From Haliotis rubra (taxonomy: Eukaryota), in assembly GCF_003918875.1 (NCBI RefSeq), contig NW_025767431.1, positions 372,001-436,000 on the forward strand: a stretch of 64,000 nt of DNA. Reading direction: 5' to 3'. This document shows, in pieces, positions 1,550-22,502 of the stretch (its first letter is position 1; every line of letters starts with the position of its first letter). Below the pieces are notes generated by a model. That model was not told the origin of the DNA and did not search any database. It saw nothing but the letters and a program-made list of their open reading frames with translations. The position numbers and the translations under genes were made by a program.

Positions 1550-3215
1550 TTAATAGCTGAAAGGTATCCAAATATATATACCATCTTCGGTCGTTTGTAT
1601 GTCTCTGTTGTCATATCTGACTGGTCCTCGGGGTGTTTGTCTCTGTTTCCATCTCCAGAAGGCAACAACAGCTACCAATAGTATTACGGCCAGGAAAAAT
1701 GACATCAAACAGACGATGGCAACAGCATGAGGAGAAGCTTGTATTAACAGAGATGTCATCAGATTTGTAAAGTTTCCAGTGTCATGTTCGCCTTAACACA
1801 TTTGCACAATATATTGATGGTAATTGCAAAGAATTATGAACAATTTATTTTTTCAACTGCCCATTACAGTTAACAGATACTTTCTGAGGCCAAACAACTT
1901 CTCAACAACTTGATGTCATCTCATTACATGTGAGGAAAATCTTTACAGATGCTGAATAATATAGTTACCATCTTGCACCGTTATCCCATCTGGACTCACC
2001 AACGTGGCAGACGAAGACTTCAAGTTCTCAGTAACAGTGACTGCTTTCTCGTTTGCATCCTCAACTGCCAATATGTGATCAATATATTGATATCGTCATC
2101 AACGAGGAAAGCATACATTGTATCATATACTTTGCACCTTTTGCCTTAGTTGTATACAGAGAGAGAGAGAGNNNNNNNNNNNNNNNNNNNNNNNNNNNNN
2201 NNNNNNNNNNNNNNNNNNNNNNNNNNNNNNNNNNNNNNNNNNNNNNNNNNNNNNNNNNNNNNNNNNNNNNNNNNNNNNNNNNNNNNNNNNNNNNNNNNNN
2301 NNNNNNNNNNNNNNNNNNNNNNNNNNNNNNNNNNNNNNNNNNNNNNNNNNNNNNNNNNNNNNNNNNNNNNNNNNNNNNNNNNNNNNNNNNNNNNNNNNNN
2401 NNNNNNNNNNNNNNNNNNNNNNNNNNNNNNNNNNNNNNNNNNNNNNNNNNNNNNNNNNNNNNNNNNNNNNNNNNNNNNNNNNNNNNNNNNNNNNNNNNNN
2501 NNNNNNNNNNNNNNNNNNNNNNNNNNNNNNNNNNNNNNNNNNNNNNNNNNNNNNNNNNNNNNNNNNNNNNNNNNNACACATCCANNNNNNNNNNNNNNNN
2601 NNNNNNNNNNNNNNNNNNNNNNNNNNNNNNNNNNNNNNNNNNNNNNNNNNNNNNNNNNNNNNNNNNNNNNNNNNNNNNNNNNNNNNNNNNNNNNNNNNNN
2701 NNNNNNNNNNNNNNNNNNNNNNNNNNNNNNNNNNNNNNNNNNNNNNNNNNNNNNNNNNNNNNNNTATGTTCATTTACCGGGACATAAATCTTGACACTTC
2801 TTCAACCTCCCTTGGACCTCAGCCTGGTGGCAGAGATGAGCACAGCTGCGGCAGTCTCTTGTATCACCATCGTAATAATAATCTCTTTGGCAGGCTGTAG
2901 AATCAAATCAACATTGTATATAATTGAACAAATAGAGTCTCTAGATTGATGACAGTTGATCGTCAGTGCTCAGAGTATTGGTCTTTGTAACATTGATATG
3001 ATCACTGAAGACGCCACAATTGCCTGCTGACGGATCAAGAACCTTGTCGCTACTCGTGATAAGACATGACAGTCGTATGAAACTTCGTCGTTGCCGTTAA
3101 TCGTGTGTGTTATTCGTGTGGAAGCAGTCTGTGCACATTCATAAATCACATGCATACATAAGACGTTTGTTTCCGGAAACACTACCCTACATTCACCATC
3201 ACTTGGAGGCAACAT
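1550..3215 (-). CDS. TNFRSF13/Grindelwald-like single-CRD transmembrane receptor, paralog D (terminal exons uncertain)
   Basis: Phase-1 exons with AG/GT borders. CRD exon 2778-2894 reads CQRDYYYDGDTRDCRSCAHLCHQAEVQGRLKKCQDLCP (not in the ORF track). Stalk exon 1969-2064 (VEDANEKAVTVTENLKSSSATLVSPDGITVQD, 96 nt as in paralog A). TM exon from 1791 (AVAIVCLMSFFLAVILLVAVVAFWRWKQR), ending at a donor after 1582 or the stop at 1550. Candidate first exon 3197-3215 (MLPPSD|gtgaat) is tentative. An N gap lies in the CRD-stalk intron. Confidence 0.7.
2172..2764. other. Assembly gaps (N runs 2172-2575 and 2585-2764) after a (GA)n microsatellite
   Basis: N characters. Confidence 0.99.
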
Positions 3216-4109
3216 GTATGTTGAAGATTGTAATGACGCAAGTAGTGTTACGAGAAAAGATACAATGCGAGTGTACGAGCAATGTGTTCAGTACCTTTCA
3301 TGATCCACCCATTACCGCCTTATTTAAATAACCCGCTACACGCAGGGAGCGGTCATTACATAGGACGTGCCCTGCGATGGTCTCTGTTTGTTTTCAGTAA
3401 TTCACAGCATATATGTAGCTGTTTGTTTTGATGATGTATACTATTGAACCTTAGTAATTTTAGAATGAAATATAAGATTAGGACAATGGAGAACTGTGAC
3501 AGGTTTTGTAAACCATCACTGTGCACTCTCCCCAGCTGTGGAGAAGTCAGTCTGACACACATCCAGCTGTGTTTCTTCCGGTTGTGTGTTCTGTCATAGA
3601 ACAAGCCACTCGACATTGAACCCCTTTTCAATGTGTTCATGCAGATATTCAGAAAGACTCTCTCGGGTAAATCAGTTTCTGTCAGTTGTTGTGTCCTTTT
3701 ATATGTCCCTAAATCTGTACAGCAGTCATCATGCGTCAATATTAAAAAAAATGTGTGAATAGAACGCCAACGCTATGGAACACCCAGTCTCGATAATCCG
3801 ACGAAATAAAATTCCATTGGGCGTCCACTGCAAAACATGGCTGAAAATTCAATGAATGAATGAAAAGATTCGCAACCCAAACAGTGGATTATAATGCAGG
3901 TTTTTATTTCGTTCGATGTGTTTATGTTTCATTAAATATGTATAATCAGTAAATATGTAAATTTACTGATTCCGTCAGGGATTATGTATATTTACTGAAA
4001 TTATCAGGAAATACCATATTAACTGAAATCTGCACTGATTCATTATACATATTTATTGAAATCAAGATCAACTGCAACATGTTCTTGATCAAACTTAACA
4101 AGTGCATTA

Positions 4110-4265
4110 GTGAGTAAGTGAGTTTAGCTTTACGCCGATTTCAGGCAATATTCCAGCAACATTACGTCAGGGGGCACCAGAAATGGGCTTCACATATTGT
4201 ACCCATGTGGGGAATCTAACCCAGGTTTTTTGAGTGACGACTGAAAGCTTTAACCACCAGGCTAC
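4110..4265 (-). mobile_element. tRNA-derived SINE, family 1
   Basis: Matches the 32066-32232 copy (caccagaaatgggcttcaca..ttgtacccatgtggggaatc); (ACTC)n-type tail. Confidence 0.8.
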
Positions 4266-4789
4266 TGGGTGCACTTTACGGATGTACCATAAATTACATT
4301 TTATAATCTAAGAGACAAGTTGTAACTAACAGGACATTTGTGCCCTAGGCTTCAAATGTAAGCAACAAAATATTTCATATAAAATATATAAATATATATG
4401 AACATAACGTCAATACAACCATCTTGACTGTCCTTAGAAACAGATTCTATCTGACGGAAAGGTCGATATAGATGTGAGAAGTATCTGAATAGTCAACTGA
4501 AAATCAGCCTTGATACCAGGTGTCTGCGTGGGGTGTCTCTACTCAAAGTCGCATCATGTGTTTATGAATCACGTTTCACTTAATACAGTAATAATTTCCC
4601 CGTATATGCATTGTTTTGCTATATATATGGCGAAATCGTTGGGTCCATATCTGGACCCGGCGAGATAACCCAAAACGTCCGGGCTCCAAGCGGGGAAGAT
4701 AACCGATATCTGGTTCCTCAATTTTGTGCTCGACGTCATGGAATGTAACACAATAAAATGACGTCATGTATTCCTTGACGTCAGATTTA

Positions 4790-5690: not shown

Positions 5691-5699
5691 ATCGGACGC

Positions 5700-5960: not shown

Positions 5961-6390
5961 TCAGTGTTTGAGTCAAATATTTTTGCAATGTATAAAGGTT
6001 TTTAAAAATGATAGATTCTTGCTTGGTAAGTATTAAGTGATAACAAATATTATCACCAAACATCGTTTGTAAGTGACACATCAAATGTGGCTAAGCATTC
6101 TTTAATTTCTCTGGTATGAGGCCTTTGGCAGGTTATAATTCTTTTTGTGTATCGCATAACAATATGTGCACTAATATCAATCACAGCCATGCTTGAATCA
6201 TTCTTAATATACGAAATTTTCGAAAACTCACAAGGAACTAACCCTCATCCCTACTGGCTGACATTGGTTGGTCAGCCTTATGACTTGTTTCATTATGTAT
6301 GCTTTCTGTATGGGATGTTGTTTATGATATTGTTTAGTGCAGGCCATTTACAGGCTGTCCAGAAAGGCCTTGAAATTTGAGTGTGGCATT

Positions 6391-8437
6391 TCACGGTGTT
6401 TTTTGTAGATTGGTAGTAATATACCATGTTGTGCGGGGGGTGTCGTTGTGTTTCTTTTGTATTTCGAAGGATGGGATTGCTCTTTTCAGGAGCACAGCAA
6501 GCGCCATGATTGAAATCAAGATGATCAGAACAGACAGAATAACGACCGCGTATTGTGCTCCGGGGGAACTATCTGAAAGAAAGAAAATTATAATGATTAA
6601 ATTTTAGAAATGGAAAACACTCGAATGTCACTGATACTGAATATATAGTCAAACATCATTGTGTCGACCTTTAATGTGCCGAACTGCGTATTTCCAATAC
6701 ACTCTCAAATTGTGTCGAACCTTGGATAACTTGGAGTATTTACGTAGTGTCATTCAACTTCCACACACGTGTTTCATTCTATATACATTTGGGAAGATGG
6801 TGTGAATATAATATTCTGGGAAACCCCTTTCAAAGGGGAGAAATTGACAATCGATACTTGACATTTTTAATTACAAGTAATGTAAAAAAAAAGCTCCTGG
6901 CTTTGTGGAGGGAATCTCATCTGGGACATTAGGATAATGATCCACCTATGCTTCAATCAGGGACCATGCTGCTCATCTATAGTTTTAATGTACTTGATAT
7001 GTACAAGACAGAGACAGAGCAAATACATGCTAGTTTTGTTCAAAAACATAGATACAGTTGAATGAATCACAGAGTTGCGTCACTTTAAGTAGCATTAAAA
7101 CACTGTCTAACAACAGTTTTCATAGAGGTAACATATGCTACATATATATAGTTTGTTTGCAGTGAAAAAGAACCGATGAATTTCACTTTAAGCGAAAAAG
7201 TAAATTGAATAAAGTGAAATTAAGCTTGCGAATCCTCATAATTTTACCTAACCAATTGAACATGTAATTATCAGAATTTTATTCAACTTAGGATAAAAGT
7301 TGTTTAACAAACGATCATAGATTCAAATCGCTATTATTGGTTTGTATTACATGGGGTAAGCGCAGCATTTGGAATAGTGAAACAAATGCACGTACTGTAC
7401 TTGATAAGCTTTAACTTAGACCAAACCAGCTTGTTGTCTGAGTTTCATTTAATGTGCTTATCCCCTTGTAATACAAATCAATAATAGCGATTTGAAAATA
7501 CAGTGTATCCTCGTTTGTTAAAAAACTTTTATCCTAAGTTAAATAAGATTCTGAGGTTTAAATGTTCAACTGGCAAGTAACACTTATGAGAATTCGCAAT
7601 CTCAGTTTCACTTTATTCGATTTACTTTTTTGTTTAAGGTGAAATTTTCACTGCTAACAGACTATTGGGTTATTAATGACAATGATTGTAGAATGCATAC
7701 TAATTGGCAAATCTGATCCTATAATGAATATACATCAACTGCAAAACATGTTACTTTCTATACCCACATTTGAACATCAACTGCAATTCCAAGTAGGCAT
7801 ATAATTAATACTAGGCATTTGTTTCATTTTTGTCTCCAGCTTTATTTTTGTCGGACACTCTGAAAGATATATACTTGTTGCCTTCAGTGCAAATTACTGC
7901 AGGATCGAAATGCACGTTTTCTTTTAGGATTGTTTTACTTACCACTGCTCAGGTTGATGGTTGATTGCTCGTAAGCAGGTGTCACAAAGTGTGTGACCTG
8001 ATCAATCGGTACATCCGTGACAGGCGCTCCGACACCGACTGAAACGCATGAGCCATTTATGGAATGACCACACATGAAGATTGAAATAAAGTGCAGTGTT
8101 ATCCTCACAAATTCAAGTTTATAATGCATGATACATGAAATGCATTTACTACAAAGTGTGTGATTACTGTAGAAATAGATTCATATATTTCATGTAAATA
8201 CCTTTGTGTTCTGAAAATGGAAATACATTTTATTCTAAAGAAGTATCGGTCTTAAGGTGTCATTTTCAGTGGTTTCATTCTGTTATTTACATTTTTTACA
8301 ATACCTGGACAATATTTTCGACAAAGTTCGACCGTCCCTCTGACAGTAGCTTGGTGGCATAATTCATCACAAGGTTGGCATGTCCCAGACACTGGTTCCA
8401 AGTAAAAGTCGTTTGAGCACTTCGACATCTTCGACAT
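6391..8437 (-). CDS. TNFRSF13/Grindelwald-like single-CRD transmembrane receptor, paralog A (~136 aa, no signal peptide)
   Basis: CRD exon 8305-8437 (MSKMSKCSNDFYLEPVSGTCQPCDELCHQATVRGTVELCRKYCP). Stalk exon 7943-8038 (VGVGAPVTDVPIDQVTHFVTPAYEQSTINLSS). TM exon 6572-6391 (DSSPGAQYAVVILSVLIILISIMALAVLLKRAIPSFEIQKKHNDTPRTTWYITTNLQKTP*). All junctions phase 1. In-frame stops lie just upstream of the ATG. The 3' end could splice further. Confidence 0.8.
6818..6827. promoter_or_regulatory. NF-kB-consensus site GGGAAACCCC in an intron of paralog A
   Basis: Matches GGGRNNYYCC; motif match only. Confidence 0.3.
7148..7665. mobile_element. Foldback/MITE element with ~210-bp imperfect inverted arms
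   Basis: 7148-7365 is the reverse complement of 7454-7665 (atagtttgtttgcagtgaaaa ... ttttcactgctaacagactat). Confidence 0.85.
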
Positions 8438-9940
8438 ACCTCTTCTGGTTCACACTGCTGATTAAAGACAGACTGTAGATAAGGGACGCCATGATTGATT
8501 TATCATTATTTGCATTTTAAAAGAATAAAGGTTATGTTTTGTCTTTTGAAACAGAAACAATATTCTGTCACAATTATCATAACTGTCCTATGAAAATATA
8601 ATCATATTGAATTTACTTTTCTTTAACAAAGTATAGCCGATAGAATTATACAGTTAGGGACTGAAATTGGACAATATGTACTACTCAAAAAGACTGAAGA
8701 ACAACTGATTATTATAAATTTATCTGTCCTGACATTGAAGGCGTTATTAGGCGTCTTTTGAGGAGCATTTATGGTATGGTGCAACTGTCTCCTGAGTTGC
8801 AATTCGCTGTGTGTCCCTTTATAAGTCAGAAATTTATGATCGGTGGATAATATTCCAACCTCGAAATCTGATCATGTTTCAAGGTTTCACCAGCACCGTA
8901 TATGTTCTCGAGGGTTTCACCCAAGGAACAAACGCAACGGACCTGCATCGGATGGTGCTTACTTCTTACGCCATGATATAACTGGAATATCACTCACTCA
9001 CTCCAACCCCCCAAAAACAACACACACACATGCGCGCACGCGCACACATACCCACAAACACACTCACTCCGCGCTATTTTCGCGGATTATCTTTCCACTC
9101 TACCCAGGTGACCTTTGGAAGTGACGTCGACGTCACCACTCTTACTGTTAATTTTCCATAGAACGTCTCTTGTGTGTGAATCTGATTAGACAAGTTTTGT
9201 CGTTCTTTCGGATGAATAGAACAGATCTTGTATTTTTATTAATGAATGTCACAAAGATATATGGCCGAATGTATCATTTCATAAGTTATAACATAAATCA
9301 GTTTATGACGTCTAGGCATCGACTCTCTACAGCAATAATTCGCTCAAATGGCAAAACAACATTTGTGTAGTACTAAAGTGTAGACTTCTATAGTCTGTAC
9401 TGTAGAGTATGTGTAGATCGTAGTTGTACTTTCATTTTATATTGTCATAACTTGTACCTTGTCCACTTCATATTGAACAAAATAGGTTAAAACTAAGACA
9501 AAGTATCAATAAATGTCTGATTAATCGAACGTATAAAACGGTTTCTACTCACCAGTATGTCTGTCGTAATACCAACACATCTTTCAGTGACTTTGGTATT
9601 CCCTATCATTATGACTAAAAGGAAGCTGACATCACCGGAAAACCTGACTCACTGCACAATATGTCCATATAGGTTTGGTGACAGTACTGCCATATTAATT
9701 CCTTTGTAGCTATTTGTATCGATTTTGTAAACTTCGTTAATTATGTAAGACAATAATTGTTAAGTATATCAAATCTTTTTGTTGTTGGTAGTTGTTTTTT
9801 TCACAGATTGATTCCTGATCAACTTTTAGTTTCAGCTTGGGGGTCGACACATAACAGTCAATTAATAACAACGCCAAACCCTTTGGAAAATCCATGGCTG
9901 TATAGTCATGACTAGTACAAGCTATTAAATGGTATTGAAC

Positions 9941-10148: not shown

Positions 10149-11349
10149 CATTAAATAGAATGATATCACGAAAAGGTGGCTTCTTCAAAGTATTTGGATT
10201 TCTTTTATTAATACACTTTCATTAACCTAACTTGCTGCATTTGACTTCATATTAATATTTTCCACACTGAGTAACCACATACATTATATTTTACCAACTT
10301 CACACACGTGTCTTCATGTATTGGGTTTTACCAAATATTTAATATTCTGTTACAAACATATATGACAATAAGGAAGCAAAACAGCACTAAACATTTGTAT
10401 GGACCGCTGAAAATTAGTGATAACATCGGGTGTTCGCGAAGGAAGTTGCCCCTACCGATAGCAACCGCTACTTGCAGAATTTGGTGTACGAAAACAAGTG
10501 GCTCTTACTTGAAACCCATGAACTTAGGTACGGTGCTAAAAAAACTGTCAACATCTTGAAATCGATTCACGACTGCAGGTTTCATAGGTAAAGGAACGCA
10601 ACTGTAGACTGCAAGTGATTGTACGAGTGAATCAAGTTCCGTGCAGTGTACACAGAGGGCATACATTGCGGAAGTAAGATTTGTATAAACGTATTGTCGT
10701 TGAGATCGAATTCTACCACAAAACACCCGGTTTGATCAAATTATAGTTTACTTATATGGTAATTCCAGTCAGCTTGTTTACTGCCGTCGATCAAGGGCAT
10801 GAAGTAATTTAGTTGTGTCGGGAATTATTTCAATCATTAGCATGATACTTAGTTCTATCTAGATGGGTGTCCATGTCTCACACTGTTTTTCTCAAATTTT
10901 TCTTCTCTGAATCACCAACCTACGTACCAGTATTACACCCAAGAGACACAAAACTAGGTACTTTGGATGTGATCATGTTCAGCTAATATCGGATGCCTAG
11001 TCATACTACCAATGTATTGTCAACATTACGCATGCCCGTAGTCTAAAAGTATTAGTAAACTGGAGTGTCCCACCATGTATTTGTTGATCACTGTCCTTCC
11101 TACAACAGCCAAGAATGTGTCGTAAAATCTATGTACGTATCAGATCTGTTCTTTTCCTCTATACAATGAACCAAAACATGTGACTACATCAGAATATTAA
11201 ATGATAACAAGCAGCAACCACATAACAGCAGTAGGTGACGCTGTTTTAGAATGTAAGCTGCGTAGTTGGAGTTTCCGGCAAGTTCACTTCCCATTCTATA
11301 TATAGTGAGTCAGCCGCCGACATCAGATATTCTGTTTGCTTAAACCGAA

Positions 11350-11500
11350 TGGGTAAGTTTAGTTTTACGCCTCTTTCCGCAATATTATGTGAATATCACG
11401 GCGGGGGACACCAGAAATGGGTTGCACACATTGTACCCATGTGGGGAATCGAACCCGAACCCGACAGAACGCTTTTACCACTAGATTTCCCCACCAACCC
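11350..11500 (-). mobile_element. SINE family 1, partial
   Basis: gcgggggacaccagaaatgggttgcacacattgtacccatgtggggaatcgaaccc. Confidence 0.75.
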
Positions 11501-12024
11501 TACAAGCTATATGAGATTCTCTCAAGGTTTTCGTACTCCCATTCCTCATCTTTGCTCAACATGAAACAACCCAGGCGTTTTGTAATTTATTGGCTCATTT
11601 GACAAACAATATTACATGGTTGAAGATCAAAGTCAAGAGTAGAAAGATTGATAACTCTTTCCTTCCTATGTCGCTAGCCGCTAAAACATTTTCATATCAA
11701 AGGTCCGTGAAGCATTTGCATGCGATGACGGTAGTTTGTGGTATAAGAGTGTCGATGTCCGTTAGAGCTTTTTGAGAAATGGATGGGGGTGCTCAGTTCA
11801 TTTTCACCCTTTTTCATAGAGTTTCATGGCCATTTAATAATCTTTCAGGACGAAAGAGGGGGTGTCCACACCCCTGCACATCCCCCATCCCCCGGATCCG
11901 CCTATGTTGTGATACGTGGCCATTTGACTTGCCTTTACATCTGTTTGTGCCGAGTTCTACTGGTTTGACAGGATACGCTCACCCTTCGCAATCATCTGAT
12001 TGATAAATTCCCCAGACAATACTA

Positions 12025-12480: not shown

Positions 12481-12643
12481 AGTGAGTGAGTTAAGTGTTT
12501 AGCCGCTTCAGCAATATTGCAGCAATATCACGGCGGGGGACACCAGAAATGGGCTTCACACATTGTACCCATTTGGGGATTCGAACCCGGGTCTTCGATG
12601 TGACGAGCGAACGCTGTAATCACTAGGCTGACCCCACCTCCCC
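12481..12643 (-). mobile_element. SINE family 1
   Basis: Near full-length, with tRNA-like B box (ggttcgaatcc on minus strand). Confidence 0.85.
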
Positions 12644-13356
12644 TTTCTCCCTGGAATCACGCAATTCCGCTAATCAACTGTACAAACATCTCAGGGTGTT
12701 ATGTGTGTATAACATGATTTCCTGGGATGATTTATCTGTTTTGTAACGAACACACATATCGAGAGAACATACACATTTTATTCTACCTGGGACACACATT
12801 ACAACTACATGCAAACAGAATGCAAACATTATAGAGTCTAAACAACTAAGAAACCATAACTACAAATGTTAATATAAAGAAAACACCTACATCCATTCTA
12901 TCGTTTTATGCATGACATTAAGATTATGTAGCATTGTTCTGTGCTCAACACAATTATCTCAGTCTGCTCATAGAACCAAACAAAAACGATACAATGTTTG
13001 TCATGGCTGAGCTCTGTCGGTTGTACAGTATGCATTTGGCGATGTGCACTCTTATAGTACTACTATGTACCGATGGACATGACGCATACTCTCAAGCAGT
13101 CCTTTCTGTCATTTCTCTAGTTCATGCAGTCCTTTCTGTCAATTCTCTAGTTCAATCATTTTATTCTTCGTCTCTCCTCGGGCGCCGCTGTCCTTCTTCG
13201 TGTGATCTCGTCTCTCGCGAGAGTATTTGTCTTCCTGGCATCTCGACTTGATTATCTTGCCACTGAGGATCGTTCCAACATATCTTTCAAGTGTTCTGTC
13301 TTTAAATTGTCTTTTTCAATTCTTTTTCTTCAAAACGTTTTAATTTGTCTATCCCA

Positions 13357-15857
13357 TCACACGTCTTCAATGGGTGTAGCAATAGGGCCACGTCCCGGTC
13401 TGTATATGGGATCTGAAATTAAGAATATGAGATTACATACCGGTTCTCTACTACAGCATACATTTTTCATGGTTCAGCACCAAACCGACTGAAACATTGA
13501 AGTAGATTTGTATAAACATGGGTGATCGTTTATGAAATTTTAAATGAATTTATAAAATTGAAATATTTGTGAATCCATTCTCTTAATACTCACTGAGGCT
13601 CTCCCTGATCTCGGGGTCTTCTTCGACCTGTGTAGGGTGCCTGGTAAATATATGTCGTGAAACAAACGATTTAATGTTGCCAACACAACCTCTTCCAAAC
13701 ACAGCCGTCACAGCAACCAGTCCCAACGCACATACAACCAGGAAGCCAACTCCTATCCAAACACCAGTTGTTAAGGATGCATAGTTGCTTTCTGGAAGAA
13801 ACAAATACAACTTGTAATATTGAAGCTTTGCATCACCATAAAGCGAAACTGATGGGAACTATAAAGATTTGCTGTTTTAGGGTTTCTTGGCCGTTGGAGA
13901 CAATATTGACCTCATTCTACAGTGAATATGTGAAATATGGTAGCTGTGGTGTGTCAGTGTGATACTCAATATAACAGCACATGTTGAGGAATCAGTTGTG
14001 TGAAACAATATACTAACTGAAACACTCCTACTCACATCACCTAGTCACCCAGAATACCAGTATTAACTGTTTGGTCCCTTATACAAGTCTAAAGCTTCGA
14101 TGTAGATGGTCTAAATAATTAAAAAAATAATTCATAATTGATGCTGCTACAAACGACAGATCAGACATGCTTTAACATAACCAAATATTTGAATCACAAT
14201 GGAACAAAATGTTGTGGGTCAAAAGCCCATGCAAAAATTGCTTTTTTTCGGTCGGACACATAAATTCTCAGAGAAATGGGCCTATGAGGGTGCAATGATA
14301 TAAAAGAATAATGGAAAGGGTGTAACGTAATTTACCAGTTTCTGGGCTTCTCTCGGCAGTGTAGGCTGAGACATTTGCTGGTAAAATCACCTTTGGCTCT
14401 GTGTGGGAACTTGTCGAGGATGTATTCTGGTCGGACCAGTCTGAAATATTGTAGAATCACAATAACAGGTTGACTCATTCATTACACTCAAAGACCTATT
14501 AGCAAAACGATCAACATGTATGGTCCATTAATCAGTTTTCAAAATATACATGTATGACAACCTAAAGAAGGAATACACACATTGAACAGATGAACGTATG
14601 GCTGAAATACTGACGAAATGACAGTTAAGTTGAATACAATGACTTCTTACCTGGACAAAGCCTCTGACAGTCGTCTCGACGTGCGTGTGGAGGGAGGCAC
14701 AGAGATCTACAATGTTCACATCTGTCCACATTGACATCGTAGAAATGTTGTACAGGACACTGGTGATGGATGGGCTTGTACCCTGAAACAACATTAGAAT
14801 TGAGTTATTAGTATACGTAATCATTTTAGTAGGGTACAGATCTTAACCTTTGTGGATCGGGTGAGACTAGATGGATTGATAGAGAAATATTATGTGTGGA
14901 CAAACTGATATTCCAAATCATTAATCAAGCAACAGGATTGATGTTAAACATAAACTGGGAATGTAGCCTGTAATTTAATGTATATTTCAAAATACCTATC
15001 CCATTAACGCGTCCCATGATGACTTCTGTGTTAAAAAATGCGATGAGTGAGTGAGGGGAAAATGTTAAAAGCCGCATCAACAATTTTGCAGCTATTCGCG
15101 GCAAGAAATACATTTTGTATAATACTATATACTATGGATACAAATAAGAATGATCGTGAAATTTAATAAAAAATTACAGGCAAATATCACATTCAAAGAG
15201 AAAAACTTGACTACTGAGATAAAATAATTTTCAGTATTCATTATTCTATATTTTGTATAATTTGATTTCTTTTAAATAAACTAAATTTTATAAATGGTGA
15301 AAAATTCGATGAGGATCGATGTGCTTCAAGTGGTGGTACATTGATCCGTTTAACTACAAACGTCACACCTTCTCGAATAGTCATTCAAGAACGACAACTC
15401 TGCCAAAGTGTTCAGACACCCGATACAAGGAAGTTATTCCGTTACAAAAAGACATATATATGGGACTGCCCTATATAACAGTTTCAACGATATTGCTTAA
15501 TTTTCACTCTAACGAATTTAATAAAGCCCGGTAAAGTTTCAGTGTCAAACTCGATTCGAACGTTATGGACTGAATCATACACGTCAGCTATATCTGAAAC
15601 ACCATTATATATCCGACGGTGAAAAGGAAAATATTATTGCTTCACTCACCTGGACACATATCCCGACATCTTGTCACTGTTCTCTGTGCCCGAGTAAACT
15701 CACAGATGTCACTACAGGGATCGCAGTTACCTGTGGCAGGGTCCAGGTAGCTCACACCTGGGTTACAGATGCTGCTTGCCCCCAACAACGACGGTAATGC
15801 AAGTCCCACAAATACCAAAACACATCCTTGAACTGTTGAAGTATAGCTTACGAACAT
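13357..15857 (-). CDS. TNFRSF13/TACI-like two-CRD type I transmembrane receptor, paralog B (232 aa)
   Basis: Five exons with phase-1 GT-AG joins, 699 nt in total. 15650-15857: signal peptide + CRD1 CNPGVSYLDPATGNCDPCSDICEFTRAQRTVTRCRDMCP. 14651-14782: CRD2 CPVQHFYDVNVDRCEHCRSLCLPPHARRDDCQRLCP. 14336-14440: S/T-rich stalk. 13594-13791: TM GVWIGVGFLVVCALGLVAVTAVF + HPTQVEE. 13357-13412: PIYRPGRGPIATPIEDV*. Kozak CCACCATG. Confidence 0.88.
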
Positions 15858-15892
15858 GGTGGATACAAGCCAAATCCGGGACTGTTTTCTTC

Positions 15893-15900
15893 CTTTTATA
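15893..15900 (-). promoter_or_regulatory. TATA box (TATAAAAG) of paralog B
   Basis: About 36-43 nt upstream of the Kozak ATG at 15857. Confidence 0.55.
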
Positions 15901-16086
15901 GAAGTTGCTATAGAATAAGCTGAAATACAGTCCTGTGAACGACCGCGACCCTTGCCTATACTGATTCATGTCGTGTAGGTAAATTTCTTAAATACTGACG
16001 AAATCCTCTCGAAGGTTCCAGAGCCTTCGGTGACTCGAAAACAAGTGTCGTCACCGGATGTTGTGAAATATCGACTATTTTTAGAA

Positions 16087-16097
16087 GGGAATTCCCC
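16087..16097. promoter_or_regulatory. Palindromic NF-kB site GGGAATTCCC(C)
   Basis: Perfect kB palindrome ~190 bp upstream of the paralog B TATA box. Confidence 0.55.
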
Positions 16098-17009
16098 TGC
16101 ACTTGACTACTCAAGTCGGGTGCTGCAGTGTGTACCGTTAGTCATCGGCTGTCACTGCGCTGGGTATACGTATGTTGCAATCTCCTGTTGTGAACGTATA
16201 AACATTAAGTCACGAGGGGACGTCTATTACAGTTATGAGCTAGGATGACTGGACTATGTGTCGCCAACCATAACAAAAGCTACGCCAGCTAAAAACATTG
16301 TTACCTGACAGCATTGTAAACATGAATATGCTCACCCGCTAGGTGAAGGTCAACGAGCTGTTCAGACTGATAGGGGCTAGTCACAACTGGTTATTCTTAT
16401 ACAATGACGTTGTATATTTATATTTAAATGCATAAACCATGGCCATGTATATAAATAATCTTGTTTATCACCACTTTTTAAAAAACATATGATTTTATTT
16501 TTACATTTTATTTTATTATATGTCCAAAAACCCCTGATTTATATGAAAATTTACACCATTTCTCCGATAAGAAATCAAAACCTAGAAGTTTGAAAAGTAC
16601 ATGCACAATCTGAGAGTCAAAGTTGCATTTTCTCAAGTGTAAAAAATATATTTTAAAAATGTTAGGGTCGGGTCGAAATTTTGGGTCGGGCGGTAATGAG
16701 AAACAAAAATATTTTTCATCGTCACGGTTTATACAATTCAGTGTAAATATATAATGTCATTGCAGAATAATACCTAGTCATGTCAATCCACCCGAAACAG
16801 ATTACATGTGCATGCAAACACAATGGGGCCATGACGCTTGGAAATAATTTACACACAAGTATCAGTGCGGCACAACCTTGTGGCGAAATATAATACTTTA
16901 GTTTTTCTGACAGAGTTATTTTTGATAAGCTATATATATGATTGTGATATTAACAACTGGGTTCTACGTTCTCTCTGATATTTGATATCATATTTGAATT
17001 TAATAATAC

Positions 17010-19475
17010 CCCGGCACTACCTTCAGTATGTCTCACCCGGCACTACGTTCAGTCTGCCTCACCATGGCCCTACGTTCAGTCAGCCTCACACCGGCACTAC
17101 GTTCAGTCAGTATCACCCCGGCACTGCATTCAGTCTGTCTCACCATGGCACTATGTTCAGTCTGTATCACCATGGCACTACGTTCAGTCTGTCTCACCCC
17201 GGCACAGCATTCAGTCTGTCTCACCATGGCACTATGTTCAGATTGTCTCCCCCCGGTCTCCCTCACCCTAGAACAACGTAGCGGTCTGTCTCACCCCGGA
17301 ACTACGTTCAGTCTGCCTCACCATGACACTACATTCAGTCTGTCTCACCCCGAGACAACATTCAGTCTGTCTCATCATGGCACTATCTTCAGTCGGTCTT
17401 ACCCTGACACTACGTTCAGCCTGCCTCACCCCAGCACTATGTTCAGTCTGTCTCACCCTGGCACTACATTCAGTCTGTCTCAAGCCGGCACTACGTTCAG
17501 TCTGCCTCACTTGGCACTATGTTCAGTCTGTATCACCCCGGTACTACGTTCAGTCTGTCTCACCATGGCACAATGTGCAGTTTGTCTCACGCTAGCACTA
17601 CGTTCAGTTTACCTCACTCTGGCACTGCGTTCAGTCTGTCTCACCATGGCACTAAGTTCAGCCTGTCTCACCCCGGCACTACGTTCAGTCTGCCTCACCC
17701 TAGCACTACGTAGCGGTCTGTCTCACCCCGGCACTACTTTCAGTCTGCCTCACCTCGGCACTGCATTCAGTCTGTCTCACCATGGCACTACTTTCAGTCT
17801 GCCCAACCCCGGCACTACGTTCAGTCCGCCTCAACCAAGCACCTGTTCAGTTTGTCTCAGCCAGCACTACGTTCCGTCTGCCCCACCCCGGCACCTATTC
17901 AGTCTGTCTCACCATTGCACGATGTTCAGTCTGTCTCACCCCATCACTAGGTTCAGTCTGTCTCACCATGGCACTATGTTCAGTCTGTCTTAACATGGCG
18001 CTATGTTCAGTTTGTCTCATCCCGGCACTACGTTCAGTCTGCCTCACCCCGGCACTGCATTCAGTCTGTCTCACCATGGCACTACGTTCAGTCAGACTCA
18101 CCCGAGCACTACGTTCATTTTGTATCACCCCTGCACTACGTTCAGTCTGCCTCACCCCGACACTACGTTCAGTCTGCCTCACCCCGGCACTACGTTCAGT
18201 CTGTACCAACCTGCACCACATTCAGTCTTTCTCATCCCGGCACTACATTCAGTCTGCCCCACCCGTCACTGCATTCAGTCTGTATCACCCGGGCACTACG
18301 TTGAGTCTGTCTCACCCGGCACTGCATTCAGTCTCTCTCACCCCTGCACTACGTTCAGTCTGTCTCACCCCAGCACAACATTCAGTCTGTCTCACCATGG
18401 CACTATGTTCAGTCTGTCTCACCATGGCACTATGTTCAGTCTGTCTCACCATGGCACTATGTTCAGTCTGTCTTACTCTGACACTACATTGAGTCTGCCT
18501 CACCCGTCACTGCACTCAGTCTGTATCATCCGGGCACTACGTTCAGTCTGTCTCACCCGGCACTGCAATCAGTCTCTCTCACTATGGAACAAAGGTCAAT
18601 CTGTTTCACCCCAGCACAATATTCAGTCTGTCTCACCATGGCACTATGTTCAGTCTGCCTCACCCCGGCACAACGTTCAGTCTGCCTCACCCCGGCACTA
18701 CGTTCATTCTGTATCACCCCTGCACTACGTTCAGTCTGCCTCACCCCGGCACTACATGCAGTCTGCCTCATCCCGCCACTACGTTCAGTCTGTCTCATCC
18801 CGGCACTACGTTCAGTCTGTCTCATCCCGGCACTACGTTCAGTCTGCCTCACCCGGCACTACGTTCATTCTGCCTCACCCCGGCACTACGTTCATTCTGT
18901 ATCACCCCGGCACTACGTTCAGTCTGTACCACCCCGGCACTACATGCAGTCTGCCTCATCCCGGCACTACGTTCAGTCTGCCTCACCCCAGCACTACGTT
19001 CATTCTGTATCACCCGGCACTACGTTCATTCTGTATCACCCCGGCACTACGTTCATTCTGTATCACCCCGGCACTACGTTCAGTCTGTACCACCCCGGCA
19101 CCACATTCAGTTTGTCTCACACTAGCACTACGTTCAGTCTGCCTCACTCCCGCACTACGTTCATTCTGTATCACCCCGGCACTACGTTCAGTCTGTCTCA
19201 TCCCGGCACTACGTTCAGTCTGTATCACCCCGGCACTACGTTCAGTCTGTATCACCCCGGCACTACGTTCAGTCTGCTCCACTCCCGCAGCACGTTCATT
19301 CTGTATCACCCCGGCACTACGTTCAGTCTGTGTCAACGCGGCACTACGTCCAGTCTGTATCACCCCTGCACTACGTTCAGTCTGTCTCATCCCGGCACTA
19401 CATGCAGTCTGTATCACCCCGGCACTACGTTCAGTCTGTATCACCCCGGCACTACGTCCAGTCTGTATCAATGTC
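17010..19475. repeat. 27-bp minisatellite (cactacgttcagtctgtctcaccccgg), ~90 copies
   Basis: 9-aa periodic translations (HPGTTFSLS / TPALRSVCL / PRHYVQSVS) in several frames. Confidence 0.97.
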
Positions 19476-19499
19476 TCATGAAGTACCTTGGCTTCGTCA

Positions 19500-19743
19500 A
19501 CCCGTGAAGGTCCGGGTTAGAATGTGCCTTCAGTATCCAATGCTTGTCGTAAGAGGCGACTAACGTAATCGGGTGGTCAGGCTCAAGACTTACTTGACAC
19601 ATGTCATCGGTTCACAATTGCGCAGATCGATGCTCATGTTGTTGATCACTGGATTGTCTGGTCCAGACTCGATTATTTACAAACCGCCGCCAAATAGCTG
19701 GAATATTGCTGAGTGCGGCGTAAAACTAAACTCACTCACTCAC
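19500..19743 (+). mobile_element. SINE family 2 (possibly MetaSINE-like core)
   Basis: cccgtgaag...gtcgtaagaggcgactaa...gaatattgctgagtgcggcgtaaaactaaactcactcact; about 8 copies in the window. Confidence 0.8.
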
Positions 19744-20763
19744 TTGGCTTTGTCAGTTCGCTTAATAAGAACATTTATTTTCACATTTTTGAATTGACAC
19801 CTTCCTAAGCATGTATATGCCATATTTCAGATTTTATATGGATTTGCCACGAAACCCAAACTGCAGAGTGTTAAGGCTGGTTTACACATCGATCTAGTCC
19901 ATCTGGTCACGATGCTCTGATCACAGTTGCACCTTGGCCATGCATGAGACTCGGTGATTACAAGAGGTATGCTGACAATGGTAGAAGACATACAATAATG
20001 AGCGAACTGCTTGCAAGGATTACGTAATACCACAGAGCGACATTGAGTATTCCAGGTATTGTTAAAACAGAAACGAAAACGTATCTATCGATCATGCAGA
20101 GCCGAACAGTATCATTGCGCGAGAGGAGGGAGTAGAGAACATTGGAAGTAGCAGAATGGATATCGATCAAGAACTGGGTACATGACTGTCGACAAGCCAA
20201 CCGGTAAGTTTCTCGTCTTTCCCATGCCATGAAAGTCTTTATTGTCTGTATTCCTTGCCAAAACATTCATTCTAAGCTGAAGCCGACATCGTCGCAACGA
20301 AAATACCACGGTTAATTATTACATATCTGAGTACATAAAACATAACAATTTTAGTAAATGTGACCAGTCTCGATCTACAAAATAACTGACAGTGGAAGGA
20401 GGAATTCAGACAGAGACGGAAATACCATCATCAAATATAATGTTGTTGTCATGGATTTCAATGCCATGGCCATTGTGGTTACTTCATTATGTAAATGAAG
20501 TATTATGTAAATGCGCATGCGTCAATACATGGAAAAGGCAGCAATCGATCGACAGCACAGCGGCATCATTCAAGAGTAGAAAATGAAACGTTTAGACATC
20601 ATATTTTCGGCAGTTATCGTCTACGAATTGAATTATCATCTGAAAAGACGACCAATACCTTGGTAGCACATGTATATTACTACACAGGGTCCAAATCCAC
20701 ACAACGTTCGTAGCACTACGACATTCGTAAGCCTAAATAAACTATGACTATGAGTCCCCTGCA

Positions 20764-20970
20764 TTCAACATTTCCTTTATATCGAGCAATATTCCAACAG
20801 CTCCAGCCTTTAGTGTGGACATTTCACAACTTTAAGGTACAGCCGAGCGTCTTCTCTGCATCAGGATTTCAGAGACGGTCATGCCTCTCTTGCCCAGAAG
20901 TTGTTTGATGAGGGTTACAACATAAAATGCCTCAGTAAAACTTTCAAGACGTTTTATGGTGGACATCTGA
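20764..20970 (+). mobile_element. Penelope-like RT C-terminal fragment
   Basis: SSNIPTAPAFSVDISQL..YSRASS..QDF...LAQKLFDEGYNIKCLSKTFKTFYGGH, with frameshift/stop. Confidence 0.65.
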
Positions 20971-21385
20971 AGGAAATTTCAATATTTGATGCATCAGTCG
21001 GATGCGGATTGTTTGGAAACCTGTCATTCTTTAAATGGGGGGTTGGGGTTGGGGGTTCTTACCATTGAATATTTGCTCATAAATATAAATGAGAATGTTG
21101 TTCCATAATCATTAATCTCTGCTGAAAGTGAAGTAAGTTGTACGATTCATACCGTTCTAGCAAAGGATCGGTGCTCAGATCCACAGATAACTGTTTTGTT
21201 TCGTGATGTCTACGTGATGAATCTGAATGGTATGTTTTGTTCCTGTCAAGTGACATTAATATATTAATGTGACCAGTTTCAGTGTATTTCATGGCACCTT
21301 CCCTCATAATCTTGCACCATCTAACGAATCGCAGTTGTCAGTAGGTGTATGTTCTAATCTAATCTCCTCTGGAACTGAAGGGAAG

Positions 21386-22502
21386 ATGACGATGTGTTCG
21401 AAAGACTTCTACAGGGACGAAGAATCTGGGAAGTGTCAGTCTTGCGCTGAGTTGTGCCATCAAGCCGAGGTTAGAGGAACTGTTGACCCCTGCAGCAGAC
21501 TTTGTCCAGGTAAAACCTTTAGTACTACACATGTTGTACTTTACCTAATGGTTCATTTATATTTAATTATAGTTATCAACAAAACATTTCTTCTTGTGTG
21601 ACACATTTTCTGAATGTGTTTCAGTCTCTTTACATGACCCTGTTACGGAGACACAAACTGGAGTATCAACAACTATAGCCAGTGCAGCGGGGACAATGCC
21701 TTTGTCACTAAATAACGGTAAGCATGCAGCACGTATACACTGCAATGTCCTCGTCACAGATCAGTCGAGATACTGTTTGATTTGTTGGTTGGTTGTTAAA
21801 CGCCGCACTCAGCAATATTCCAGCTATATGGCGGCGGTCTGGAAATAATAGAGCCTGGACAAGATAATCCAGTGATCAACAGCATGAGCTTCGATCTACA
21901 TAATTGGGATACGGTGACAAGCGTTAGCCAAGTCATCGCTGACACCACCCGATCCTGTTAGCCGCCTCTTACGACAAGCATGAGTTGCTGCAGACCAATT
22001 CTATTACTGAACTTAAGGGCTGGATACTGTTTTGAGTTGAATGATGGTAGGGTGTGGAGAAACAGGGGTGAACGAAATGCCAACTGTACCATTGCTGAAC
22101 ATGATCGCCTTGGGAGGAAGTTTGATTGCATCGACTGGAATGCTGGTTGGACATCGGACTGACCTTGTCGTCGTAAGGGTTGTCAAGGCAGTTGTACGTT
22201 ACAGGGACGAAATTTTCATACCAGTGGCCCCAACTGATGTATCTTATAATTCACCAGATCAACGTGGCATTTTGATTTCTTGTCAATCGTCTCTTCCAGA
22301 TGGATACCTGATGCCAGAGGTGTTAGTAATTACACTGGGAGTGGGCATCATCCTGGTGGCTCTGGCGGGCTTTGTCATCTTGTTCTATCAAAGAAGTTGG
22401 CGAAGAACCGACCGCAGTTCAAAACGGCCTGGAAAAGACCCAGGCACATATGGGTATACTGTATCTTCTATCAGTGCAACATTTCTAGCCAAATCTTACT
22501 GA
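21386..22502 (+). CDS. TNFRSF13/Grindelwald-like single-CRD transmembrane receptor, paralog C (~139 aa)
   Basis: CRD exon 21386-21509 (MTMCSKDFYRDEESGKCQSCAELCHQAEVRGTVDPCSRLCP). Stalk exon 21625-21717. TM exon 22300-22502 (VLVITLGVGIILVALAGFVILFYQRSWRR...). All joins phase 1. Possible upstream exon 20182-20203 (MTVDKPT|gtaagt); 3' end uncertain. Confidence 0.8.
21780..22015 (-). mobile_element. SINE family 2 in an intron of paralog C
   Basis: Reverse complement of 19500-19743. Confidence 0.8.

What the first reader, a model, noticed from the sequence alone, without database searches (positions are those of the whole stretch)
1550..22502. Cluster of four TACI/BCMA/Grindelwald-type TNF-receptor genes in an invertebrate
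Seen: five exons encode a C-x4-5-Y-x-[DE]-x4-C-x2-C-x3-C-x8-11-C-x3-CP domain. Each gene then has a phase-1 S/T-rich stalk exon (93-105 nt) and a TM exon. Two of the CRD exons (2778-2894, 14651-14782) are invisible in the ORF track. Established: this six-cysteine spacing matches TNFRSF13B/17 (TACI, BCMA) CRDs and Drosophila Grindelwald rather than the classical multi-CRD TNFR repeat. Inference: a lineage-specific expanded family of small TNF-ligand receptors, easily missed by automated annotation, in an animal without B cells.
Basis: partly seen in the sequence, partly recalled or inferred. Interest (0 to 1): 0.82.

Follow-up and report, generated by a model that had tools for sequence, protein, structure and literature searches.

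The report
Abalone cluster of mini TNF-receptor genes
This stretch of blacklip abalone DNA carries four small membrane-receptor genes whose cysteine-rich head is predicted to fold like fly Grindelwald and human BCMA/TACI TNF receptors. It is a real, lineage-specific expansion of a receptor kind already described in invertebrates, and no function has been tested.

Summary
Exactly five exons in the 64-kb window encode the six-cysteine motif; about 0 are expected by chance. They belong to four genes of Haliotis rubra, each built as CRD, Ser/Thr-rich phase-1 stalk exon and transmembrane exon. Three are already RefSeq models named 'uncharacterized' (LOC124259300, LOC124259270, LOC124259298). The fourth, gene B, is uncalled in H. 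rubra but intact, with dN/dS 0.37 against its H. rufescens orthologue.

The TNF-receptor reading is supported by computation.
- A profile of 124 family CRDs hits only TACI and BCMA at the top of the PDB (E 3e-4 to 8e-3).
- AlphaFold models of two CRDs give a hairpin plus helices.
- Against 48,161 PDB chains, the matches with Z of 2 or more are Grindelwald (Z 5.2), BCMA, TACI and Fn14, plus one unrelated chain at Z 2.1.

Gene C is type I with two CRDs and a conserved PxQ TRAF-like tail motif. Genes A, B and D lack signal peptides, as BCMA does. The assembly gap lies inside an intron of gene A.

Grindelwald-like receptors in molluscs are already catalogued in a preprint. This scan had already found the same family at two other places on this scaffold and on one other piece of the genome.

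The parts
3295..3301 (-). Gene A (LOC124259300): candidate first coding exon, ATGAAAG followed by GT ('MK' plus 1 nt)
   Evidence: It is the only ATGAAAG|GT match on the minus strand between 2895 and 6390; 4367-4407 was skipped. It fits the N-terminus MK|ACQRD of P0007/P0095. The assignment is inferred, because the exon is too short to align.
2778..2894 (-). Gene A CRD exon (117 nt, phase 1-1)
   Evidence: It matches XP_046549362 residues 3-41 at 100%.
2172..2764 (.). Assembly gap (two N runs) inside gene A's intron between the CRD and stalk exons
   Evidence: The gap is intronic and the phases match on both sides. It was not filled.
1969..2064 (-). Gene A stalk exon (96 nt, phase 1)
1582..1737 (-). 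Gene A transmembrane exon
820..949 (-). Gene A alternative last coding exons: 921-949 (isoform X2) and 820-863 (isoform X1, which ends in TSSV)
8305..8437 (-). Gene B exon 1: start codon directly followed by the CRD (MSKMSKC...), with no signal peptide. The gene is not called in the H. rubra annotation.
7943..8038 (-). Gene B stalk exon (96 nt, phase 1)
6391..6572 (-). Gene B transmembrane and tail exon, running to the stop codon
   Evidence: dN/dS against H. rufescens is 0.37.
15650..15857 (-). Gene C (LOC124259270) exon 1: signal peptide plus CRD1
   Evidence: The exons reproduce XP_046549333 exactly.
14651..14782 (-). Gene C CRD2 exon (132 nt, phase 1-1)
   Evidence: AlphaFold and fold search.
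14336..14440 (-). Gene C stalk exon (105 nt)
13594..13791 (-). Gene C transmembrane exon, whose tail carries the motif HPTQVEED
13357..13412 (-). Gene C last coding exon (...PIATPIEDV, then stop)
20182..20203 (+). Gene D (LOC124259298) first coding exon (MTVDKPT)
21345..21509 (+). Gene D CRD exon. The acceptor is at 21381 in isoform X2 and 21345 in X1. There is no signal peptide.
21625..21717 (+). Gene D stalk exon (93 nt)
22300..22502 (+). Gene D transmembrane and tail exon

Best explanation
The window holds four paralogous genes of Haliotis rubra. They encode small single-pass membrane proteins of the TNF-receptor superfamily, in the minimal class that includes Drosophila Grindelwald and vertebrate BCMA, TACI and Fn14.

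Each ectodomain has one CRD (genes A, B, D) or two (gene C). A CRD is about 40 residues: a beta-hairpin closed by one disulfide, then a helix-loop-helix with spacing C-x3-C-x9/11-C-x3-C. It sits on a Ser/Thr-rich stalk of about 40 residues that is probably O-glycosylated, followed by one transmembrane helix and a tail of 30-55 residues.

The most likely mechanism is inferred, not shown. The hairpin and the helix loop would insert between two protomers of a trimeric abalone TNF-family ligand, as Grindelwald does with Eiger. Three receptors would cluster, and the tail would recruit TRAF-type adaptors. Gene C is type I and has a conserved membrane-proximal PxQ motif (PTQVEED), so it is the best candidate for a signalling receptor. 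Genes A, B and D start 1-12 residues before the first cysteine and have no signal peptide, giving type III topology like BCMA, TACI and BAFF-R. Their short tails have no recognisable TRAF motif, so they may act as co-receptors, as membrane decoys, or through unknown partners.

The four genes are one part of a much larger tandem family, on this scaffold and in other abalones.
For: Gene structure and conservation:
- Motif and gene models. The window exons with canonical GT-AG sites reproduce RefSeq proteins P0001 and P0004 exactly. For P0007 and P0095 they reproduce residues 3 to the end, downstream of a short, inferred first exon.
- Orthologues lie in the same order in H. rufescens and H. cracherodii.
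- Selection is purifying: dN/dS is 0.14 for gene C and 0.37 for gene B.

Sequence evidence for the family:
- A profile of the five CRDs finds 93 proteins at E<1e-3, with 1-4 CRDs. Most have a signal peptide or a bare N-terminus, a stalk of about 40 aa, one TM and a tail.
- A profile of 124 CRDs against the PDB puts 12 TACI/BCMA chains on top (E 3.4e-4 to 7.6e-3), with all six cysteines aligned. Grindelwald scores E 0.17.
- 47 of 124 CRDs hit Pfam TACI-CRD2, 46 hit BCMA-Tall_bind and 11 hit TNFR_c6.
- UniProt names some gastropod members 'TNFR-Cys domain-containing protein'.

Fold evidence:
- AlphaFold gives pLDDT 86 for C-CRD1 and 81.5 for C-CRD2, each a hairpin plus helices.
- Foldseek's top hit is Grindelwald 6zsy (TM 0.73, prob 0.96), followed by BCMA.
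- For C-CRD1, VIA-align against 48,161 chains finds only four with Z>=2: Grindelwald 5.2 (42 of 43 residues, rmsd 2.7), BCMA 2.9 and 2.0, and TACI 2.1.
- For C-CRD2 it finds Grindelwald 5.2, BCMA 3.4, Fn14 3.1, TACI 2.2 and one unrelated chain at 2.1.
- The register of the alignment (model 1-43 to Grnd 36-78) puts C22/C26/C38/C42 on Grnd C57/C61/C73/C77, and the near-invariant Tyr/Phe on Grnd Phe46 (PMC8024323).

Tail motifs:
- PxQx[ST] occurs in 13 of 78 tails, against 3.8 +/- 1.8 in shuffles. PxQxxD occurs in 6, against 1.2 +/- 1.1.
- PTQV is conserved in gene C orthologues and in Gigantopelta. Batillaria has PVQET.
Against: - No binding, signalling or expression experiment exists.
- The single exons do not reach Pfam significance (best E 0.49).
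- Foldseek E-values are not significant for so small a domain, and Z 5.2 is modest by the tool's own caveat.
- The DxL ligand-contact motif of BCMA, TACI and BAFF-R is absent: Asp is kept but Leu is not.
- Grindelwald has eight cysteines; these CRDs have six.
- The tails of A, B and D have no TRAF-like motif.
- The motif-enrichment test ignores the relatedness of the sequences.
Runs guessed to be RNA hold 16-22% of the words of genes B and C, about the exon share.
Confidence: 0.72

Rival explanations
1. A mollusc-specific family of small cysteine-rich membrane proteins that only resembles minimal TNFR CRDs. The fold (hairpin plus disulfide-stapled helix-loop-helix) would be convergent or very distantly related, and the proteins would bind something other than TNF ligands.
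For: - Sequence similarity to TNFRs is marginal: E 3e-4 only with a 124-sequence profile, and the single exons are not significant.
- Z 5.2 is below the level the tool calls safe.
- CxxxC...CxxxC helix hairpins also occur in unrelated scorpion toxins, which appear at E 0.016-0.16.
- The DxL motif is absent.
Against: - In two exhaustive fold searches the matches are Grindelwald, BCMA, TACI and Fn14 with one unrelated chain at Z 2.1. They cover the whole domain.
- The cysteine register is identical to BCMA's in the hairpin and to Grindelwald's in the C2 module.
- The architecture and the PxQ tail motifs fit TNFRs.
- A preprint using its own HMM already files molluscan CxxCxxxC single-CRD proteins as grnd homologues (10.1101/2024.07.27.603686).
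Confidence: 0.15
2. They are true TNFR-family members, but genes A, B and D do not signal. Lacking signal peptides and TRAF motifs, and with tails of 31-42 residues, they would be membrane-bound decoys or modulators of the signalling receptor C and its relatives.
For: - Tails are short and lack [PSAT]x[QE]E or PxQ motifs.
- They form a separate CRD subgroup: A, B and D share 39-61% identity, against 21-38% with C's CRDs.
- Gene A also has an annotated isoform without a TM (P0006).
Against: - BCMA and BAFF-R are also type III with short or atypical motifs, and they do signal.
- The D-type tails share a conserved C-terminal 'VSSISA' stretch across species, which suggests an interaction site.
- No functional data exist either way.
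Confidence: 0.3
3. Some of the four, above all the unannotated gene B, are decaying or unexpressed duplicates.
For: - Gene B is not called in the H. rubra annotation.
- A two-CRD neighbour present in H. rufescens and H. cracherodii is missing from H. rubra, so the cluster does gain and lose genes.
Against: - Gene B has an intact ORF, canonical splice sites and all six cysteines.
- It has an annotated orthologue in H. rufescens and dN/dS of 0.37.
- Four runs guessed to be RNA hold 18-22% of its stretch, about the exon share.
Confidence: 0.08

Closest known systems
Drosophila Grindelwald (Grnd), PDB 6zsy/6zt0
   Same: - It is the best structural match for both modelled CRDs (Z 5.2, 40-42 residues, rmsd 2.5-3.0; TM 0.73).
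- It is also a hairpin followed by a helix-loop-helix.
- Its C2 spacing C-x3-C-x11-C-x3-C is identical and in register.
- A conserved aromatic residue sits at the position of Phe46.
- It has a small ectodomain (a single CRD in Grnd), one TM, a short tail and no death domain.
   Different: - Grnd has eight cysteines, with an X2 hairpin carrying two disulfides. These CRDs have six, with a one-disulfide A1-like hairpin.
- The sequence match is not significant (E 0.17).
- Gene C has two CRDs.
- Genes A, B and D lack a signal peptide.
- Orthology with Grnd is not shown.
Human BCMA (TNFRSF17) and TACI (TNFRSF13B) CRD2
   Same: - They are the only significant sequence matches in the PDB (E 3e-4 to 8e-3 with the family profile).
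- The register C-x4-Y/F-x-D-x5-C-x2-C-x3-C...C-x3-C is the same.
- Both are type III, without a signal peptide, like genes A, B and D.
- TACI has two CRDs, like gene C.
   Different: - The loop between Cys4 and Cys5 is 9-11 residues here, against 6-8.
- The DxL ligand-contact motif is not conserved.
- The structural Z is only 2-3.4.
- Their BAFF/APRIL ligands and B-cell role are vertebrate features.
- Tails are much shorter here.
Human Fn14 (TNFRSF12A)
   Same: It has a single CRD described as a one-disulfide hairpin plus a C2 module (PMC8024323), which is the module pair that the cysteine pattern here suggests. It appears at Z 3.1 for C-CRD2.
   Different: Cysteine spacing in its C2 module differs. 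The Pfam stn_TNFRSF12A model matched only 1 of 124 CRDs, weakly.
Invertebrate 'grnd homologs' of preprint 10.1101/2024.07.27.603686
   Same: The preprint describes TNFRs with a single CRD and a CxxCxxxC signature in Mollusca, Annelida and Cnidaria, with lineage-specific expansions. It is the same kind of protein.
   Different: - Haliotis is mentioned there only for its TNF ligand.
- The largest expansion reported is 12 paralogues, in Capitella. Abalone appears to have more.
- I did not see type III topology, two-CRD members or cluster structure described in the passages I read.

Membership tests
TNF-receptor superfamily, minimal-CRD class (BCMA/TACI/Fn14/Grnd-like) | CRD fold: an N-terminal disulfide-closed beta-hairpin module plus a C-terminal helix-loop-helix module | tested here: met
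   AlphaFold gives pLDDT 86 and 81.5 with strands followed by helices. In the exhaustive fold searches, the matches at Z>=2 are Grnd, BCMA, TACI and Fn14, plus one unrelated chain at Z 2.1.
TNF-receptor superfamily, minimal-CRD class (BCMA/TACI/Fn14/Grnd-like) | Significant sequence or profile similarity to known TNFR CRDs | tested here: met
   The family profile A2 hits TACI at E 3.4e-4 and BCMA at 8.7e-4. 47 of 124 CRDs hit Pfam TACI-CRD2 (best E 4.8e-5, below the gathering score for most). The five window exons on their own are not significant.
TNF-receptor superfamily, minimal-CRD class (BCMA/TACI/Fn14/Grnd-like) | Single-pass membrane protein with the CRD(s) extracellular at the N-terminus (type I or type III) | tested here: met
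   Each gene has one hydrophobic segment of 21 or more residues, 38-48 residues after the last CRD. Gene C has a signal peptide. A, B and D start at or just before Cys1. Topology is predicted only.
TNF-receptor superfamily, minimal-CRD class (BCMA/TACI/Fn14/Grnd-like) | Binds a trimeric TNF-family ligand | not testable with these tools
   No multimer modelling or binding assay is available. TNF-ligand arrays in this genome are known only from unchecked scan notes.
TNF-receptor superfamily, minimal-CRD class (BCMA/TACI/Fn14/Grnd-like) | Cytoplasmic TRAF-interacting motif (PxQx[T/S/D], [PSAT]x[QE]E) | tested here: inconclusive
   Gene C has PTQVEED, conserved in three Haliotis species and as PTQVVD in Gigantopelta. 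The motifs are enriched in family tails against shuffles. A, B and D have none.
BAFF/APRIL receptor subgroup (BCMA, TACI, BAFF-R) | DxL motif at the hairpin tip that contacts the ligand | tested here: not met
   Asp is kept in 113 of 124 CRDs. The residue two positions later is G, V, H, N, A or D, not Leu. The window CRDs read DPA, EPV, DEE, DGD and DVN.
BAFF/APRIL receptor subgroup (BCMA, TACI, BAFF-R) | Type III topology (no signal peptide) | tested here: met
   A, B and D and their orthologues start with Met 1-12 residues before Cys1. Gene C is type I.
Grindelwald orthologues | X2 hairpin with two intercalated disulfides (eight cysteines in the CRD) | tested here: not met
   There are only six invariant cysteines, with one pair in the hairpin. 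The Grnd description is taken from PMC8024323.
Grindelwald orthologues | C2 module C-x3-C-x11-C-x3-C and an aromatic residue (Phe46) packed between the modules | tested here: met
   The spacing is x3/x11/x3 in A, B, C-CRD1 and D, and x9 in C-CRD2. The alignment register 1-43 to 36-78 puts the four cysteines and the Tyr/Phe (123 of 124 CRDs) on C57/C61/C73/C77 and F46. Nested disulfide pairing itself could not be checked.
Grindelwald orthologues | Significant sequence similarity or phylogenetic orthology | tested here: inconclusive
   The family profile scores E 0.17 against 6zsy over the full domain. No tree including arthropod Grnd was built.

The most novel reading that the evidence does not exclude
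The signal-peptide-less (type III) mini-receptors A, B and D share BCMA's exact hairpin register. They could be surviving invertebrate members of the same ancient lineage that gave rise to vertebrate BCMA, TACI and BAFF-R. Grindelwald-type and BCMA-type receptors would then be one bilaterian clade. In abalone, this cluster would pair a TRAF-coupled two-CRD signalling receptor (C) with tail-poor type III decoys or co-receptors matched to the expanded TNF-ligand arrays.
Probability: 0.15. Interest if true: 0.6.

Novelty: new member of a known kind. Interest (0 to 1): 0.36.

Why it matters
Abalones are farmed animals that suffer from viral and bacterial disease, and their TNF pathway is known mostly from a ligand. 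This work names a set of 'uncharacterized' RefSeq genes, plus one uncalled gene, as probable minimal TNF receptors. That gives candidate receptors for the expanded molluscan TNF ligands.

It also shows that type I and type III topologies, and one- and two-CRD forms, coexist in one tandem family. This bears on how the BCMA/TACI/Fn14/Grindelwald class evolved. The kind of receptor is already described in invertebrates, so the gain is annotation and a test system, not a new principle.

Tried and rejected
- Pfam on the five exons alone gave nothing significant (TACI-CRD2 E 0.49).
- The five-sequence profile against the PDB put TACI on top, but only at E 0.5. It became significant only with the 124-CRD profile.
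- The search for homologous proteins with P0001 and P0010 returned only close Haliotis orthologues, and no H. rubra protein for gene B.
No splice-junction evidence was obtained. I sent those places to no search tool afterwards, and the local scan for gene A's first exon skipped them.
- Model coordinates are not exposed, so disulfide connectivity (C2 nested against D2 crossed) could not be read.
- I first considered genes A and B to be one two-CRD gene, with B's phase-1 donor joining A's phase-1 acceptor. I rejected this because B has its own stalk and TM exons, orthologous to the three-exon H. rufescens gene P0010, and A has its own RefSeq start.
- P0003 is annotated 'laminin subunit alpha-like'. 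I rejected that as a naming artefact for a four-CRD family member.
- A TRAF6 motif PxExx[Ar/Ac] is not enriched in the tails.

Full report
**Source and observation**

The window is Haliotis rubra (blacklip abalone) scaffold QXJH01000716.1; window position plus 372000 gives the record position.

A six-frame regex scan finds exactly five copies of C-x4/5-[YF]-x-[DE]-x5-C-x2-C-x3-C-x9/11-C-x3-C. They lie at 2782-2892(-), 8309-8419(-), 14655-14759(-), 15654-15767(-) and 21395-21505(+), with none in the other 42 kb. A family HMM on all stop-free segments finds the same five (E 4e-17 to 5e-12); the next hit is at E 0.68. One hundred local-composition shuffles give 0.00 full and 0.02 core matches per window. 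The motif is real and not chance.

**Gene models**

A profile of the five CRDs against 1.84 billion representative proteins returned 93 hits. Among them are the RefSeq products of this very locus:
- P0001 = XP_046549333, LOC124259270, which I call gene C.
- P0004 and P0094 = LOC124259298 isoforms X2 and X1, gene D.
- P0007 and P0095 = LOC124259300 isoforms X2 and X1, gene A. P0006 is a further annotated product of this gene that lacks the transmembrane segment.

All are named 'uncharacterized protein'. Re-deriving the exons with canonical AG/GT sites reproduces these proteins exactly, except that for gene A only residues 3 onward were rebuilt.

| Gene | Strand | Coding exons |
|---|---|---|
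| C | - | 15650-15857 (signal peptide + CRD1), 14651-14782 (CRD2), 14336-14440 (stalk), 13594-13791 (TM), 13357-13412 |
| D | + | 20182-20203, 21381-21509 (X1 acceptor at 21345), 21625-21717, 22300-22502 |
| A | - | candidate start exon 3295-3301, 2778-2894, 1969-2064, 1582-1737, then 921-949 or 820-863 |
| B | - | 8305-8437, 7943-8038, 6391-6572 |

Gene B has no H. rubra protein in the collection, and no gene is called there. Its exons were built by homology to H. rufescens P0010. They give an intact protein of 133-136 aa with canonical splice sites.

'Four genes' is correct. I considered and rejected a fusion of A and B.

**The assembly gap**

The N runs 2172-2575 and 2585-2764 sit in gene A's intron between the CRD exon and the stalk exon. 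The donor is at 2777 and the acceptor at 2065. The phases agree (1/1), and RefSeq joins the two sides. The gap-free H. rufescens orthologue shows CRD (L002 14134-14247), stalk (about 14580-14681), TM (about 15092-15289) and last exon (about 16346-16387) in the same order, with no extra exon. I did not look up or fill the gap letters.

**What the domain is**

On the single exons, Pfam is silent; the best hit is TACI-CRD2 at E 0.49.

With an alignment of 124 CRDs from the family (A2), the PDB search puts twelve TNFRSF13B/17 sequences on top. TACI 1xu1 scores E 3.4e-4 and BCMA 1oqd scores 8.7e-4, with all six cysteines aligned. Grindelwald follows at E 0.17 over its whole domain. Scanned one by one, 47 of 124 CRDs touch Pfam TACI-CRD2, 46 touch BCMA-Tall_bind and 11 touch TNFR_c6. 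UniProt already labels some gastropod members 'TNFR-Cys domain-containing protein'.

AlphaFold2 models of gene C's CRD1 (pLDDT 86) and CRD2 (pLDDT 81.5) show a two-stranded hairpin followed by short helices.
- Foldseek ranks Grindelwald first (6zsy TM 0.73, prob 0.96; 6zt0 TM 0.74), then BCMA. E-values are not significant for 43 residues.
- The exhaustive aligner was run against 48,161 representative PDB chains. For CRD1 it finds only four chains with Z>=2: Grindelwald 5.2 (42/43 residues, rmsd 2.7), BCMA 2.9 and 2.0, and TACI 2.1.
- For CRD2 it finds Grindelwald 5.2, BCMA 3.4, Fn14 3.1, BCMA 2.6, TACI 2.2 and one unrelated chain at 2.1.

That test is passed.

**Comparison with Grindelwald and with BCMA/TACI**

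The Grnd paper (PMC8024323) describes an X2 hairpin with two disulfides, followed by a C2 helix-loop-helix with spacing C57-x3-C61-x11-C73-x3-C77. Phe46 packs between the two modules.

The structural alignment runs model 1-43 to Grnd 36-78. In that register the abalone C22/C26/C38/C42 fall exactly on those four cysteines. The family's almost invariant Tyr/Phe (123 of 124) falls on Phe46.

The differences are these:
- The abalone hairpin has one disulfide, as in BCMA, TACI and Fn14, not two.
- The hairpin register C-x4-Y-x-D-x5-C is that of BCMA.
- The DxL contact motif of the BAFF/APRIL receptors is not kept.

The domain is therefore best described as a BCMA-like hairpin joined to a Grnd-like C2 module. 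It belongs to the minimal-CRD class of TNFRs, but it is not demonstrably an orthologue of any one of them.

**Architecture and likely mechanism**

Of the 78 family members that begin with Met and have a predicted transmembrane segment, 58 have a signal-peptide-like N-terminus. The median stalk is about 40 aa and tails run from 7 to 191 aa. Family members carry one to four CRD copies.

In the window, gene C is type I with two CRDs. Genes A, B and D begin MK|AC..., MSKMSKC... and M..GKMTMC..., with no hydrophobic leader. Their orthologues also carry a Met 1-3 residues before Cys1.

Family tails are enriched for TRAF-type motifs compared with shuffled tails:

| Motif | Tails with motif (of 78) | Shuffled mean +/- sd |
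|---|---|---|
| PxQx[ST] | 13 | 3.8 +/- 1.8 |
| PxQxxD | 6 | 1.2 +/- 1.1 |
| [PSAT]x[QE]E | 26 | 14.7 +/- 3.1 |

This test ignores the relatedness of the sequences. Gene C carries HPTQVEED 21 residues after the membrane. The motif is conserved in H. asinina and H. cracherodii and appears as RPTQVVD in Gigantopelta. A Batillaria member even has PVQET. Genes A, B and D have no such motif.

My inferred mechanism is ligand-trimer binding through the hairpin and helix loop, as in Egr:Grnd. Gene C would signal through TRAFs. A, B and D would act as co-receptors or decoys, or signal through unknown partners.

**Evolution**

The A/B/D CRDs share 39-61% identity, against 21-38% with C's two CRDs. Orthologues of all four genes exist in other abalones.
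- In H. rufescens, the B orthologue is followed 4 kb downstream by an uncalled A orthologue (L002).
- In H. cracherodii, the order is D(-), then C (L005).
- dN/dS is 0.14 for gene C and 0.37 for gene B, so both are under constraint.
- Three sampled 21-kb loci within H. rufescens chr 17.79-18.0 Mb hold 14 CRD exons.

The family reaches at least Gigantopelta, Batillaria, Littorina, Nucella, Babylonia and the clam Ruditapes.

This scan had already reported the same family on this scaffold, 248 kb and 64 kb before the window (s1-325280, s1-335038), and on another piece of the genome (s1-335046). I did not re-check those windows. P0023 (LOC124259284), on the same scaffold, is a family hit.

**Expression**

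Four runs of one study, guessed to be RNA, hold 16-17% of the sampled words of 13500-16000 (gene C). Four others hold 18-22% of 6300-8500 (gene B). That is about the exon share.

Those places were sent to no search tool afterwards.

Logan contigs of 0.9-2.5 kb encode whole family proteins (P0011, P0021, P0025, P0027, P0041, P0053). They are most simply read as spliced transcripts in other species, but that is an inference.

**Novelty**

A 2024-26 preprint (10.1101/2024.07.27.603686) reports 115 grnd-like receptors with a single CRD and a CxxCxxxC signature across invertebrates, molluscs included, with lineage-specific expansions. This finding is therefore a new set of members of a known kind.

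The points specific to this window are:
- type I and type III forms mixed in one cluster;
- a two-CRD member with a TRAF-like motif;
- one uncalled gene;
- an abalone expansion that seems to exceed the maximum of 12 paralogues reported there.

Noticed in passing
window 17008-19470: A 27-bp minisatellite of about 92 copies (77-79% matches) lies between genes C and D. The GenBank annotation calls a 126-aa gene on it (window about 19010-19390, minus strand), which is probably spurious. In H. cracherodii, the matching interval between D and C holds the CRD1 exon of a two-CRD gene that is absent from the H. rubra window.
   Followed up: partly
L005 5164-21694 (H. cracherodii); L002 1-5258 (H. rufescens): A two-CRD, signal-peptide-less family gene (P0002/P0098) has its two CRD exons about 13 kb apart in H. 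cracherodii. The orthologue of gene C is nested in the intron between them. H. rubra has no trace of either of these CRD exons in the window.
   Followed up: partly
window 8420-8437 (-): Gene B begins with a 9-bp tandem duplication, ATGTCGAAG twice, giving MSKMSK. Two in-frame start codons are therefore possible.
   Followed up: no
window 1582-1737 (-): P0006, a product of gene A, uses an acceptor inside the TM exon. The frame shifts, giving a protein with neither a signal peptide nor a TM. Its meaning is unclear; it is possibly a non-productive transcript.
   Followed up: no
L002 14128-16387 (H. rufescens): The orthologue of gene A is present with CRD, stalk, TM and last exons, but it is not called in the H. 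rufescens annotation.
   Followed up: partly
window 54720-55259 (+) and 57866-58315 (+): There is a reverse-transcriptase fragment (Pfam RVT_1, E 2.5e-10) and an exon with an Arrestin_C domain (E 5.6e-10). An arrestin-domain gene therefore lies at the far end of the window, near the PSAPPQY note s1-322383.
   Followed up: no
window about 4118-4274, 11349-11600, 12495-12660, 23092-23385: A short interspersed repeat recurs on both strands. Its ORF artefacts share the string HQKW(A/V)xHIVPMWGI, and it is probably a SINE.
   Followed up: no
window 820-863 (-): Gene A isoform X1 ends in ...EQTSSV, a class I PDZ-ligand-like C-terminus. Gene C ends in ...PIEDV. This is of possible interest because Grnd is reported to bind the PDZ protein Veli.
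   Followed up: no
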